A stretch of 63,327 nucleotides of DNA, counting the filler, from Octopus bimaculoides (lineage: Eukaryota), in NCBI RefSeq assembly GCF_001194135.2. It is 8 parts of 7 records of this genome, joined end to end, with 100 filler letters (N's around TTAATTAATTAA, not from the genome) between each part and the next. Parts side by side here need not be neighbours in the genome. Positions count along the whole stretch, not along the records: positions 9,654 to 17,934 come from NC_069005.1; 7 more parts are not named here. One strand, 5' to 3'. Shown in pieces: positions 10,439-12,274 of this stretch. Every line of letters starts with the position of its first letter. Within the stretch, counting starts at the first letter, position 1. The notes under the pieces were generated by a model. It was not told where the DNA came from. It worked only from the letters and a program-made list of their open reading frames with translations, and did not search any database. The position numbers and the translations under genes are program-made.

Positions 10439-10764
10439 TATATATACTTACATATGCTCAAAAAATATGAGGCCGGAGTGTTCGTGTCCCGAATACCAGT
10501 TTCAATGTCAACCCAGGACTATTGTAGAAGACGCTAGTCAAAAGTGCAGCGCAAAGAAAATGACCCTGAAATTACCTGTTTGTGAAGTGTAACTTGTGAA
10601 TGAGTGAGAACGGACGGTAGACAAAGAGACAAGATAAGTGGACAGATAGATTAGACTGAGAGACAGTGAGACACACAGGTAGTGGGGCAGACAAACATGC
10701 AAATAGATACATTATTTACATCATTTACAATTGATGGATATTTTTCCTCATCTTATTTGTTGTT

Positions 10765-10810
10765 AATACAACATTTCGGCTGTTTTACCCTCCAGCCTTC
10801 ATCAGGTATC
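10765..10810 (-). ncRNA. Minimal type I hammerhead motif (copy 1, left arm), one core-adjacent C>T change
   Basis: Reverse complement reads GATAC-CTGATGA-A-GGCTG(gagggtaaaa)CAGCC-GAAAT-GTT-GTATT. Stem I GATAC/GTATT. Confidence 0.65.
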
Positions 10811-10871
10811 TTGGGGAAATTTCGAACCTGGTTTCTCATTCCTAAGGTATTTTTCGATGTTGTTGTTGTTG

Positions 10872-10919
<48 letters not shown>

Positions 10920-11152
10920 TCACTGCTTGGAATCAAACTCGATATCTTGGGGTTAGTAGCCCGTGCTCTTAACCACTATGACATATGCCCGGGTATATGG
11001 CGTAGTGGCTACTAACCCCAAGATTCCGAGTTGGATTCCAGGCAGTGACTTGAGTAGTAGTAATAATAATTATAATAATAATAATAACAACAGCAGCAAC
11101 AACATCGAAAAATACCTTAGGAATGAGAACCCAGGTTCGAAATTTCCCCAAC

Positions 11153-11196
11153 ACACCTGATGAAGGCTGAAGGGTATATCAGCCGAAACGTTGTGT
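11153..11196 (+). ncRNA. Minimal type I hammerhead ribozyme motif (copy 1, right arm)
   Basis: ACAC-CTGATGA-A-GGCTGA(agggtata)TCAGCC-GAAAC-GTT-GTGT. Stem I ACAC/GTGT, 6-bp stem II, loop-less palindromic ACGT stem III, GUU cleavage triplet. Confidence 0.8.
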
Positions 11197-12274
11197 TAAT
11201 AACGAACAAGATGGGAACAAATATCCGTCAAATGTAAATAATGTACATAATTCCTCATCTCTTAAATATAGAACTGTATTATGCAAATAGATAGATAAAC
11301 ATATAATGATATAGGCAGATAGGTTAACAAGTAGATAGACAGATAATTGTCTACAAAGATAGGCAAAGGGAAAATTGCCGAAAACGTTAGGGCGTCGGAT
11401 AGGAGGTTTCATGGTTTTTGTTTCGACTCCTTGTCCTCTTAGTTCAAATCCCGCCGAGCTTAACTTTGCCTCTCTTCCGTTCGGAGTTGATATAAAAATA
11501 CAGCAGTCCAGAGTGGTGGTCGATAAAAAGATTGTAGCAATTGAGCTCTGTGAGAAGGTGGATAAGAAATCTTGTATGTAGTTCGGCTGTTTGTGTTCTG
11601 ACGGCAACGCCTGTGATAACTCGGATGCCCAACTGCATCGGCCCAATTCGGTGGCTTTCTCCTTGGACAACCGTTGGCTTGAAAACGAGACTTGCTCAGA
11701 CGGACAGCTTTATCTTTTACTTATTTCAGTCAAGAGTTTCGGTTGAACAAATCGCCCACAGTACTTATTTTTAAAGTTCGATCTCGTTTGATGAATCGCT
11801 AAGTTACTGGGACGTAAAAAGAAACACAACAAGCCAGGGGTGGGTAAACACACACACACACACACACACACATGACGGGTTTAATAAAGTTTCGTTCGAC
11901 TCAATTCATTCACCACACATTGGTCGGTCTGGATCTAAAGCAGAAGATATTTAACCAAGGTGCAACGCAGTGGGCCTGAACCCGAGAGCATGTGGTTGCA
12001 AAGCGAACTTCTTAACCACACAGCTATGCCTGCTCCTGCAAATCTTCGCAGAAATATTTTGCCCAAGTTTGGGCATAATTGTATCGATGAATGATCAACC
12101 TTCAGTGACAGAGGACCTATATATAGATGTAGTTAGAGATAAATAGATATGAAGGCATAGAGACAGTGTTAAGAAGGTTGAAGAACTTATACATGGGTGC
12201 GTGACGGACAGCGAAGTAGACAGATAGACTGTTAGATAGGGATATACACACACGCATAGATATACAGAAAGATA

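What the first reader, a model, noticed from the sequence alone, without database searches (positions are those of the whole stretch)
10697..11293. Palindromic 'double-headed' SINE-like element carrying hammerhead ribozymes, mobilised as one unit
Seen: a 571-bp inverted dimer. From the central axis (CCC|GGG, 10990/10991) each arm reads outward: a tRNA-like head (TGGCGTAGTGG A-box-like, GAGTT(C/G)GATTCC B-box-like, CTACTAA loop), an (AAT)n tract, ~60 nt of spacer, a hammerhead, then a short tail. The sense arm has no TTTT run. One 13-bp direct repeat (ATGCAAATAGATA) brackets the entire palindrome, and copy 2 shows the same with a different 12-bp repeat. Established: tRNA heads supply Pol III promoters in SINEs. 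Minimal hammerheads with a palindromic loop-less stem III mark Penelope-like elements and retrozymes, and PLE insertions often carry inverted segments. Inference: a non-autonomous Pol III retroelement that borrows PLE machinery, possibly made by snap-back cDNA synthesis at its self-complementary 5' end. I know of no description of this exact architecture, but it may already sit in repeat libraries as an unclassified or ordinary SINE.
Basis: partly seen in the sequence, partly recalled or inferred. Interest (0 to 1): 0.92.

Follow-up and report, generated by a model that had tools for sequence, protein, structure and literature searches.

The report
Head-to-head SINE-like pair with hammerheads
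A 571-bp insertion consists of two copies of a small, tRNA-headed, non-coding retroelement joined head to head, each carrying the minimal hammerhead ribozyme typical of Penelope-like retrotransposons; it most likely records a Penelope enzyme copying RNA from both cut DNA ends at once.

Summary
Positions 10710-11280 form an inverted dimer with its axis at 10990|10991. The arms are 89% identical and are bracketed by an exact 13-bp direct repeat.

Each arm, read outward from the axis, has:
- a degenerate tRNA-like head;
- an (AAT)n(AAC)n tract;
- a spacer of about 50 nt;
- a complete minimal hammerhead of the Penelope-like-element (PLE) type;
- a tail of 60 nt (left) or 88 nt (right).

No Rfam hammerhead or tRNA model detects these parts. 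The hammerhead call rests on a published descriptor that I re-implemented. It gave 0 chance hits in 2000 random 8.3-kb sequences.

Its claims of "mobilised as one unit" and "snap-back" are not. The structure matches the published PLE insertion signature:
- an inverted copy at the 5' end;
- an extension of about 30 nt on one side only;
- in vitro, a PLE protein that cuts and extends both DNA strands from two internal start sites.

I read the palindrome as the product of reverse transcription primed from both target strands on a short RNA.

The closest known elements are the schistosome Sm-alpha/Sj-alpha SINE-like elements and the non-LTR retrozymes. I could reach no second copy and no host PLE, so family-level claims remain untested.

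The parts
10697..10709 (.). Left target-site duplication, ATGCAAATAGATA
   Evidence: Exact 13-mer repeated at 11281-11293. Chance estimate: 0 of 942 empirical window pairs and 1 of 5000 Markov simulations.
10710..10769 (-). Left-arm 3' tail: 60 nt after the predicted ribozyme cut (short form)
   Evidence: It ends 28-32 nt short of the right-arm tail.
10766..10809 (-). Left-arm minimal hammerhead. Predicted cut lies between 10770 and 10769. C15.2 is changed to U, and helix I is UAC/GUA.
   Evidence: Alignment to the right arm and coordinates. Core CUGAUGA and GAAA are intact. Helix I differs from the right arm by a compensatory pair.
10810..10858 (-). Left-arm spacer (ATCGAAAAATACCTTAGGAATGAGAA.CCAGGTTCGAAATTTCCCCAA)
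   Evidence: The best-conserved stretch between the arms: one difference in 49 nt.
10859..10915 (-). Left-arm microsatellite, (AAT)n(AAC)n in the sense orientation
   Evidence: TRF rows 10858-10876 and 10875-10915.
10916..10990 (-). Left-arm tRNA-like head (fuller version), with A-box-like and B-box-like motifs
   Evidence: ARAGORN at the 80% threshold calls a degenerate cloverleaf, tRNA-Ser(act), at 10982-10918. Only 1 of 2000 shuffles of the head is called. The head aligns to the head of another SINE at about 11950-12030 on the - strand, and 3 of 2000 shuffles score as well.
10991..11052 (+). Right-arm tRNA-like head. It lacks 13 nt (GGTTAAGAGCACG) that the left arm has.
   Evidence: A-box-like TGGCGTAGTGG at 10998-11008 and B-box-like GAGTTGGATTCC at 11029-11040. 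ARAGORN does not call it.
11053..11103 (+). Right-arm microsatellite, (AGT)3(AAT)n(AAC/AGC)n
11104..11152 (+). Right-arm spacer
11153..11196 (+). Right-arm minimal hammerhead: ACAC-CUGAUGA-A-GGCUGA(8-nt loop)UCAGCC-GAAA-CG-UU|GUGU. Predicted cut is at 11192|11193.
   Evidence: Descriptor hit, with 0 hits in 2000 random 8.3-kb sequences. Its features match those listed for PLE min-HHRs in PMC4209133.
11193..11280 (+). Right-arm 3' tail: 88 nt after the predicted cut (long form). The last 28-32 nt (about 11249-11280) have no counterpart in the left arm.
   Evidence: This is comparable with the one-sided 30-40-bp PLE 'tail' (PMC8557442, PMC11167929).
11281..11293 (.). Right target-site duplication, ATGCAAATAGATA

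Best explanation
This is a single retrotransposition event of a short, non-autonomous, SINE-like element.

The element's RNA, about 280-290 nt, has three parts:
- a tRNA-derived head, which probably supplies an internal Pol III promoter (inferred);
- an internal (AAT)n(AAC)n tract;
- a 3' module borrowed from a Penelope-like element (PLE): spacer, minimal hammerhead, and a tail of 60-88 nt.

Proposed integration (inferred from the anatomy plus published in vitro work):
1. A PLE reverse transcriptase/GIY-YIG endonuclease, probably acting as a dimer, made nicks staggered by 13 bp.
2. It primed reverse transcription from BOTH 3' ends, each on one copy of the RNA.
3. One priming used the distal internal start site (+88 nt after the ribozyme cut site) and the other the proximal site (+60).
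4. Because the template is short, both cDNAs ran to the RNA 5' end.
5. They were joined end to end, each then serving as template for the other strand.

The product is a head-to-head palindrome flanked by a 13-bp duplication, with a one-sided extension of about 30 nt.

The hammerhead is probably kept as part of the PLE recognition and processing module. Its cleavage is not needed for this insertion, since both arms were copied from uncleaved RNA (this is shown directly by the sequence).

Each arm keeps its own head at the axis. The pair could therefore be transcribed outward in both directions (inferred).
For: Shown by the sequence:
- An inverted dimer with no central spacer. Both arms start at the same nucleotide, GGG(C/T)ATATG.
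- An exact 13-bp flanking duplication, with no copy of it at the axis.
- Termini next to the duplication that are not inverted repeats: CATTATTTAC... on the left against ...GAACTGTATT on the right.
- Arms that end +60 and +88 nt after the predicted ribozyme cut.
- A min-HHR with every feature listed for PLE ribozymes: a 6-bp helix II, an unpaired base between positions 9 and 10.1, a G10.1-C11.1 pair, a loop-less palindromic ACGU helix III, and a 4-bp helix I.
- One compensatory difference in helix I between the arms, C:G against U:A.
- No ORF of note.

From related sequences:
- The same core and helix II occur in 54 metagenome contigs, most of them apparently animal host DNA. Of 40 distinct sequences, 12-14 meet the full descriptor.
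- In L032 and L017 the ribozyme lies about 100 nt 3' of an ORF whose relatives carry GIY-YIG and RVT_1 domains.
- Seven loci hold a second, inverted ribozyme-bearing copy, and in all seven the 5' ends face each other.

From the literature:
- PLE insertions often have an inverted copy at the 5' end, a 30-40-bp tail at one end only, and a bias toward microsatellite targets (PMC8557442).
- A purified anole PLE protein cleaves and extends both strands and is predicted to dimerise. It starts reverse transcription at two internal sites whose interval is the 'tail'. Its main start lies 85-92 nt 3' of the ribozyme cut. It does not need ribozyme cleavage (PMC11167929).

Head: the ARAGORN relaxed call and the similarity to a neighbouring SINE head.
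Against: - Only one copy could be examined. No second copy and no autonomous PLE from the same genome could be retrieved, so a shared 3' module, the defining proof of partnership, is untested.
- Rfam tRNA and hammerhead models give no hit at E<=10.
- ARAGORN calls the head only at a relaxed threshold, where the false-positive rate in random sequence is 0.38 per kb.
- The arms differ by 11%. That fits either old age or two different template RNAs, and these cannot be told apart. Thirteen of 13 identical positions in the duplication is expected about 22% of the time at that divergence.
- The single compensatory pair has a chance probability of about 0.07 by my estimate.
- In the anole PLE the RNA must extend beyond the reverse-transcription start for protein binding (PMC11167929). 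Copied arms would lack that part, so it is unclear how such copies could themselves propagate.
- The insertion site is near microsatellites but not inside a TRF-called one.
Confidence: 0.6

Rival explanations
1. One reading: the palindrome itself is the transposing unit. It would be made once by snap-back self-priming of a cDNA at a self-complementary 5' end, and then copied as a whole.
For: CATATG near the 5' end is self-complementary.
Against: - There is no unpaired loop remnant at the axis. The palindrome runs through CCC|GGG.
- The cDNA 3' end (...CATATGCCC) would have three unpaired bases if it folded back on CATATG.
- The two outer ends are unequal, +60 and +88 nt.
- A whole-unit transcript would be a hairpin of about 280 bp. 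It would also have to cross T4-5 runs on the antisense arm, which stop Pol III.
- Priming from both strands, as shown in vitro (PMC11167929), explains the structure without extra steps.
Confidence: 0.15
2. A single-arm insertion was later turned into a palindrome by local DNA events, such as an inverted duplication during repair or replication. Alternatively, a second copy landed exactly at the 5' end of the first.
For: The 11% divergence between the arms and a 13-nt indel show that the arms have separate histories, or at least a long one.
Against: - One 13-bp duplication brackets the whole unit and no flank copy lies at the axis.
- Both arms end at exactly the same 5' nucleotide.
- A second insertion would carry its own duplication.
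- An inverted duplication would copy flanking DNA as well.
Confidence: 0.08
3. A foldback or MITE-like DNA transposon with long terminal inverted repeats, moved by a transposase.
For: Inverted arms of about 280 bp flanked by a direct repeat.
Against: - The actual termini beside the duplication are not inverted repeats, because of the one-sided extension of about 30 nt.
- A 13-bp duplication is longer than is usual for transposases (my own knowledge).
- The arms hold a promoter-like head and a ribozyme in the same orientation, a layout expected of a transcribed RNA unit.
Confidence: 0.04
4. An assembly or sequencing artefact, such as a chimeric palindromic read.
For: Palindromes are a known artefact class in some library types (my own knowledge). 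An assembly gap lies at 16570-16919 in the same piece.
Against: Artefactual palindromes are near-perfect. Here the arms differ at 28 positions and by 6 indels, including different microsatellite lengths, and the unit has a clean duplication.
Confidence: 0.02

Closest known systems
Sm-alpha / Sj-alpha SINE-like retroposons of Schistosoma
   Same: A tRNA-derived, Pol III-type promoter head is followed by a hammerhead ribozyme in a short non-coding retroposon. tRNAscan-type tools call the copies tRNA-derived (PMC2770079). The layout is 'promoter followed by HHR', and transcription appears to be by Pol III (PMC6765202).
   Different: The schistosome ribozyme is a classical type I hammerhead (PMC8490949), active in cis or trans. 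The copies are described as tandem or repetitive arrays (PMC6765202). Here the ribozyme is the loop-less minimal PLE type and the copies are inverted head to head. Sequence homology was not tested, because no Sm-alpha sequence was at hand.
Penelope-like elements: pLTR hammerhead and complex inverted insertions
   Same: - The min-HHR architecture (PMC4209133).
- An inverted copy adjoining the 5' end, a one-sided tail of about 30-40 bp, and microsatellite-rich targets (PMC8557442).
- Cleavage and extension of both strands, and two internal reverse-transcription start sites, with the main one 85-92 nt past the ribozyme cut (PMC11167929).
- Here the arms end at +60 and +88 nt.
   Different: There is no RT/EN ORF. 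The 5' part is a tRNA-like head rather than PLE sequence. Both inverted copies are full length, instead of one being 5'-truncated. No partial tandem (pLTR) is present.
Metazoan non-LTR retrozymes
   Same: They are short, non-coding, hammerhead-bearing elements, now argued to be non-autonomous derivatives of PLEs (PMC7229834; bioRxiv 10.64898/2026.07.22.740005).
   Different: Retrozymes are direct tandem repeats with classical type I hammerheads and give circular RNAs. No tRNA head is reported for them. Here there is no tandem, so no unit-length RNA can be excised in cis.
L1 twin priming (5'-inverted L1 and Alu insertions)
   Same: The geometry is the same: the 3' ends of both nicked target strands prime on RNA, giving an inversion inside one target-site duplication (PMC2912911, PMC12016303).
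   Different: In twin priming the two segments are different parts of one RNA and the inner junction is at a variable internal position. Here both segments are the whole element, primed at its 3' module and joined at the RNA 5' ends.
tRNA-derived SINEs in the same piece
   Same: The left head resembles the head of another SINE about 1 kb away. Relaxed ARAGORN calls also fall on the heads of other SINE copies in the piece, at 11352-11442, 13694-13773 and 16134-16213.
   Different: Those SINEs have no hammerhead and no similarity to the spacer, ribozyme or tail. They occur singly or in direct tandem, and some end in (ATT)n.

Membership tests
Non-autonomous derivative of a Penelope-like element | Minimal PLE-type hammerhead: long helix II, an unpaired base after position 9, a G10.1-C11.1 pair, a palindromic 15.2-16.2 pair, and a short helix I | tested here: met
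   The right arm meets the full descriptor, which gave 0 hits in 2000 random sequences. The feature list is from PMC4209133. The left arm differs only by one wobble pair.
Non-autonomous derivative of a Penelope-like element | Complex insertion with an inverted copy at the 5' end | tested here: met
   A head-to-head dimer. The same divergent arrangement occurs in 7 of 7 inverted pairs in unrelated hammerhead-bearing loci. It is described in PMC8557442.
Non-autonomous derivative of a Penelope-like element | A 'tail' extension of 30-40 bp at one end only | tested here: met
   The right arm is 28-32 nt longer at its 3' end than the left. This is at the low edge of the published range.
Non-autonomous derivative of a Penelope-like element | 3' module homologous to an autonomous PLE of the same genome | not testable with these tools
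   No animal genome collection was available. The protein route returned only PLEs from unrelated metagenome contigs, none traceable to this genome. Similarity to the 54 loci is confined to the ribozyme.
Non-autonomous derivative of a Penelope-like element | No RT/EN coding capacity | tested here: met
   Only short or low-complexity ORFs are present.
tRNA-derived SINE | A 5' region derived from a tRNA, with A and B boxes | tested here: inconclusive
   For: ARAGORN calls the left head at the 80% threshold only, 1 of 2000 shuffles is called, and the head is similar to another SINE head (p about 0.0015). Against: no Rfam tRNA match at E<=10, the right head is not called, and the false-positive rate at that threshold is 0.38 per kb.
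tRNA-derived SINE | Pol III transcription | not testable with these tools
   The only observation is that the sense strand has no T4 run, and given its composition this is weak.
tRNA-derived SINE | Many dispersed copies, each with its own target-site duplication | not testable with these tools
   There is one copy in the piece. Searches of protein, metagenome, viral and prokaryote collections found no other copy.
Sm-alpha/Sj-alpha-type SINE-like element | Classical type I hammerhead with a real helix III, in tandem arrays | tested here: not met
   Helix III is loop-less (ACGU) and the copies are inverted, not tandem. No Rfam hammerhead model matches.
Non-LTR retrozyme | Direct tandem repeats of about 170-400 bp, each with a type I hammerhead | tested here: not met
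   There is no direct repeat of the unit in the piece. The two ribozymes lie on opposite strands.
Foldback/MITE DNA transposon | Terminal inverted repeats abutting the target-site duplication | tested here: not met
   The termini CATTATTTAC... and ...GAACTGTATT are not complementary. The arm homology stops about 30 nt inside the right end.

The most novel reading that the evidence does not exclude
PLE ribonucleoprotein particles would be obligate dimers that carry two template RNAs, perhaps paired through the palindromic helix III of their minimal hammerheads. They would insert both RNAs symmetrically. For a short tRNA-headed parasite of the PLE, the full-length head-to-head palindrome would then be the normal product of integration. 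That product would also be a compact bidirectional Pol III unit. This would make the family a natural, base-resolution record of two-strand target-primed reverse transcription, and the first clear case of a Pol III SINE that parasitises a PLE rather than a LINE.
Probability: 0.25. Interest if true: 0.75.

Novelty: new variant of a known kind. Interest (0 to 1): 0.58.

Why it matters
How PLEs produce their tandem and inverted insertions is still an open mechanistic question (PMC8557442). The only biochemical study shows cutting and extension of both strands, and two internal start sites, but only in vitro and for one lizard element (PMC11167929).

A short element whose two cDNAs both reach the RNA 5' end preserves every junction of the event in 571 bp. 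Both start sites, the 13-bp stagger and the end-to-end join can all be read from it. If the family is abundant, a simple genome survey would test the two-strand model in vivo.

It would also extend the SINE concept, a Pol III head plus a borrowed 3' module, to PLE partners. Until now only the schistosome Sm-alpha elements have hinted at this.

If instead this is a rare, one-off structure, it is just another example of a known PLE insertion pattern.

Tried and rejected
Searches that found nothing useful:
- Rfam at permissive thresholds, on the whole piece and on the 591-nt element alone, gave no hammerhead or tRNA match. It gave only microsatellite-driven or hairpin-driven miRNA noise.
- ARAGORN at default settings gave nothing.
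- To reach other copies, I searched the protein collection with translated sense and antisense ORFs of the element. I also ran exact-protein look-ups of the two longest ORFs. All returned nothing.
- DNA pattern scans of viral contigs and prokaryote genomes returned nothing.
- The metagenome scan with the hammerhead pattern gave 54 loci, but none belongs to this family. Similarity stops at the ribozyme. One locus, L025, is a bacterial chance match.
- I looked for a PLE from this host by searching with a PLE ORF taken from a metagenome locus. It returned only PLEs from metagenome contigs of other sources.
- Text searches for printed sequence strings and for prior descriptions found nothing relevant. 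The Octopus vulgaris repeat paper does not mention hammerheads and holds no consensus library as text.

Analyses that gave no signal:
- Thermodynamic folding of the heads, the ribozyme and the tail was not distinguishable from shuffles, with z-scores between -1.7 and +0.65. The ribozyme dimer cofold was uninformative. I make no structural claim beyond the descriptor.
- I looked for target-site duplications around the inverted pairs in the metagenome loci and found none of 9 nt or more.

Rejected: the absence of T runs as evidence for Pol III, because it is explained by base composition.
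Full report
**What is there.**
The piece (9654-17934) is non-coding and rich in microsatellites and SINE copies. 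It has no credible ORF. Within it, 10710-11280 is an inverted dimer.

The left arm (10710-10990) has its sense strand on -. The right arm (10991-11280) has its sense strand on +. They meet at CCC|GGG (10990|10991) with no spacer. Both begin with GGG(C/T)ATATG. Over 257 aligned positions, 229 are identical (K2P 0.119; 19 transitions, 9 transversions). There are 6 indel events, including a 13-nt deletion in the right head and different microsatellite lengths. That level of divergence rules out a sequencing or assembly palindrome.

The exact 13-mer ATGCAAATAGATA lies at 10697-10709 and at 11281-11293. A non-periodic shared 13-mer was seen in 0 of 942 equally spaced window pairs from the same piece. 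It was seen in 1 of 5000 simulations of the flanks. No copy of the 13-mer lies at the axis, so this is one insertion event.

**Anatomy of an arm, read outward from the axis (right arm / left arm).**
- Head: 10991-11052 / 10990-10916.
- (AAT)n(AAC)n tract: 11053-11103 / 10915-10859.
- Spacer: 11104-11152 / 10858-10810. This is the best-conserved part.
- Hammerhead: 11153-11196 / 10809-10766.
- Tail to the end of the element.

**The hammerhead.**
No Rfam hammerhead family matches at E<=10, even when only 591 nt are searched. This is expected for the 'minimal' hammerheads of Penelope-like elements, which lack a helix III hairpin (PMC4209133).

I re-implemented that paper's descriptor. The right arm satisfies it fully. 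It reads ACAC-CUGAUGA-A-GGCUGA(8-nt loop)UCAGCC-GAAA-C-G-U-U|GUGU.
- Helix I has 4 bp.
- There is an unpaired A between positions 9 and 10.1.
- The G10.1-C11.1 pair is present, and helix II has 6 bp.
- Helix III is the loop-less palindrome ACGU.
- The predicted cut is at 11192|11193.

The descriptor gave 0 hits in 2000 random sequences of the same size and dinucleotide make-up.

The left arm differs by C15.2 to U, giving a U.G wobble. It also carries a compensatory change in helix I, UAC/GUA instead of CAC/GUG. I estimate the chance probability of that pair at about 0.07, so it is suggestive only.

**The head.**
The A-box-like and B-box-like motifs and the CTACTAA loop are present.
- ARAGORN finds nothing at default settings.
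- At 80% of its thresholds it draws a degenerate cloverleaf, called tRNA-Ser(act), in the left head (10982-10918).
- That setting yields 0.38 calls per kb in random sequence, but only 1 call in 2000 shuffles of the head itself. It also picks out the heads of other SINEs in the piece.
- The left head aligns to the head of an unrelated SINE on the - strand at about 11950-12030, and only 3 of 2000 shuffles score as well.
- From memory, and not tested here, the D-loop AGTGGTTAAG and the loop CU(A/G)CUAA recall eukaryotic tRNA-Ser(GCU).
- The Rfam tRNA model does not match.

I take a tRNA-derived head as probable, not proven. The sense strands have no T4 run, but they are T-poor, so this says little.

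**Insertion signature.**
The right arm ends 88 nt after the predicted ribozyme cut and the left arm ends 60 nt after it. In the alignment, the last 28-32 nt of the right arm have no partner. As a result, the termini next to the duplication are not inverted repeats. That argues against a foldback or MITE transposon.

The site lies in degenerate GATA-like sequence between microsatellite arrays, but not inside a TRF-called array.

**Related sequences elsewhere.**
No other copy of this element could be reached.

A scan of metagenome contigs for CTGATGAAGGCTG-N7-10-CAGCCGAAA gave 54 loci. They have unrelated flanks. Judging by the contig names and contents, most look like animal host DNA in gut, coral and freshwater samples.
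- Only the core and helix II were specified in the pattern. Even so, 12-14 of 40 distinct sequences also have the correct helix III, UH cleavage site and helix I. These are therefore real ribozymes of the same type.
- In L032 and L017 the ribozyme (GAAACGUA|CGGC, the same loop-less form) lies about 100 nt 3' of an ORF with a GIY-YIG match. Relatives of that ORF carry GIY-YIG above the Pfam cut-off and RVT_1. This is the PLE gene arrangement.
- Seven loci (L001, L003, L019, L029, L031, L039, L041; at least four families) contain a second, inverted, ribozyme-bearing copy. In all seven the 5' ends face each other.
- L003 83-326 is a compact 246-bp palindrome.
- None of these loci has a tRNA-like call near the ribozyme. 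Similarity to the window element is limited to the ribozyme.

**Mechanism.**
Craig et al. (PMC8557442) describe PLE insertions as often carrying an inverted, 5'-truncated copy at the 5' end. They also describe a 30-40-bp 'tail' at one end only and a bias for microsatellites.

Frangieh et al. (PMC11167929) purified an anole PLE protein and found the following.
- It is predicted to be a dimer.
- It starts reverse transcription at two internal RNA sites, and the interval between them is the 'tail'.
- Its main start is 111-118 nt into the ORF, while the ribozyme cut is 26 nt into it. The start is therefore 85-92 nt past the cut.
- Ribozyme cleavage is not required, and uncleaved RNA is the main template.

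The window element fits this point by point.
- Two outward-facing copies lie inside one 13-bp duplication.
- Their 3' ends lie at +88 and +60 from the cut.
- Both copies were made from uncleaved RNA.

I therefore propose that both 3' ends of a 13-bp staggered break primed on the element's RNA. One used the distal start and one the proximal start. Because the RNA is only about 290 nt, both cDNAs reached its 5' end. They were then joined end to end, each templating the other's second strand. The two-sided priming and the two start sites are published in vitro facts for another PLE. Their application here, and the joining step, are inference.

- A snap-back should leave an unpaired loop remnant at the centre, and there is none.
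- The cDNA end ...CATATGCCC cannot self-prime on CATATG without a 3' mismatch.
- A transcript of the whole unit would be a long hairpin. It would have to cross T4-5 runs on the antisense arm: three in the left arm and one in the right.
- Unit mobilisation does not explain the unequal ends.

It is not excluded, and I give it 0.15. The test is whether all genomic dimers share the same arm-specific lesions.

**A caveat on propagation.**
In the anole element, the RNA must extend beyond the reverse-transcription start for protein binding. Copies like these arms would lack that part. They may therefore be dead-on-arrival products of a few master loci, in which the head and module sit upstream of PLE sequence. 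That is testable from the family's phylogeny.

**Comparison and novelty.**
The basic plan, a tRNA-derived Pol III head followed by a hammerhead, is already known from schistosome Sm-alpha/Sj-alpha elements (PMC2770079, PMC6765202, PMC8490949). Those have classical type I ribozymes and tandem arrays.

Non-LTR retrozymes are argued to be non-autonomous PLE derivatives (PMC7229834; bioRxiv 10.64898/2026.07.22.740005). They are direct tandems without tRNA heads.

L1 twin priming has the same geometry, but it joins different parts of one RNA (PMC2912911).

I found no description of a tRNA-headed element with a PLE min-HHR module, nor of full-length head-to-head dimers as an insertion form. I could not consult Repbase or Dfam. 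I rate it a new variant of a known kind.

The host is presumably an octopus. No tool here could confirm it.

Noticed in passing
window 13190-14230, plus 16130-16305 and 11374-11500: Another SINE family (TGGCAGAATCGTTAGC...GTTCAAATTCCGCCGAGGTCGAC...). Four copies lie in direct tandem, with spacing of 247-287 bp. They are linked by trinucleotide microsatellites, (CTT)n, (ATT)n and (GTT)n(AGT)n, and end in (ATT)n. Relaxed ARAGORN calls fall on their heads.
   Followed up: partly
window ~11690-12040, - strand: A third, longer tRNA-derived SINE with an internal (AC)n/(GT)n tract. Its head (GGCATAGCTGTGTGGTTAAGAAG...) resembles the left head of the palindrome, and 3 of 2000 shuffles score as well.
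   Followed up: partly
window 10126-10206 and 12415-12496: (TATC)20 and (AGAT)20 arrays lie in inverted orientation and bracket about 2.2 kb that contains the palindrome and two SINEs. The repeat finder reports them as 74-90% complementary arms. This is probably a coincidence of one microsatellite type occurring on both strands.
   Followed up: no
window 11249-11262 versus 10745-10756 and 11207-11217: The one-sided extension of the right arm contains TTCCTCATCT, the reverse complement of the tail motif AAGATG(A/G)GGAA. Folding gave no significant stem, so this may be chance (p about 0.04 by my estimate).
   Followed up: partly
loci L001, L003, L019, L029, L031, L039, L041: Metagenome contigs (termite gut and others) carry pairs of inverted hammerhead-bearing copies, always with the 5' ends facing. 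L003 83-326 is a 246-bp palindrome. I found no target-site duplications of 9 nt or more around them.
   Followed up: partly
loci L032, L017, L009, L015, L030: A PLE family from environmental metagenome contigs (source not established). An ORF end with a GIY-YIG match is followed after about 100 nt by the min-HHR, and then by the next ORF, which is the tandem PLE layout. Its relatives carry precomputed Pfam PF26215, which is absent from the local Pfam copy.
   Followed up: partly
locus L025: A bacterial contig (GidA ORF, tRNA-Val) matches the hammerhead pattern by chance. It has no helix I or helix III.
   Followed up: yes
window 15282-15495, 10331-10401, 17049-17219: Sub-threshold Rfam matches to mir-3149, mir-297 and mir-1277 all sit on (AC)n, (AT)n or (GT)n tracts and are artefacts of low complexity.
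   Followed up: yes
window 16570-16919: A run of 350 N inside the piece, which is an assembly gap.
   Followed up: no
window 12865-13010: A long (CTA)n array interrupted by CCACCACCT blocks, repeated with a period of about 57 nt (family D5).
   Followed up: no
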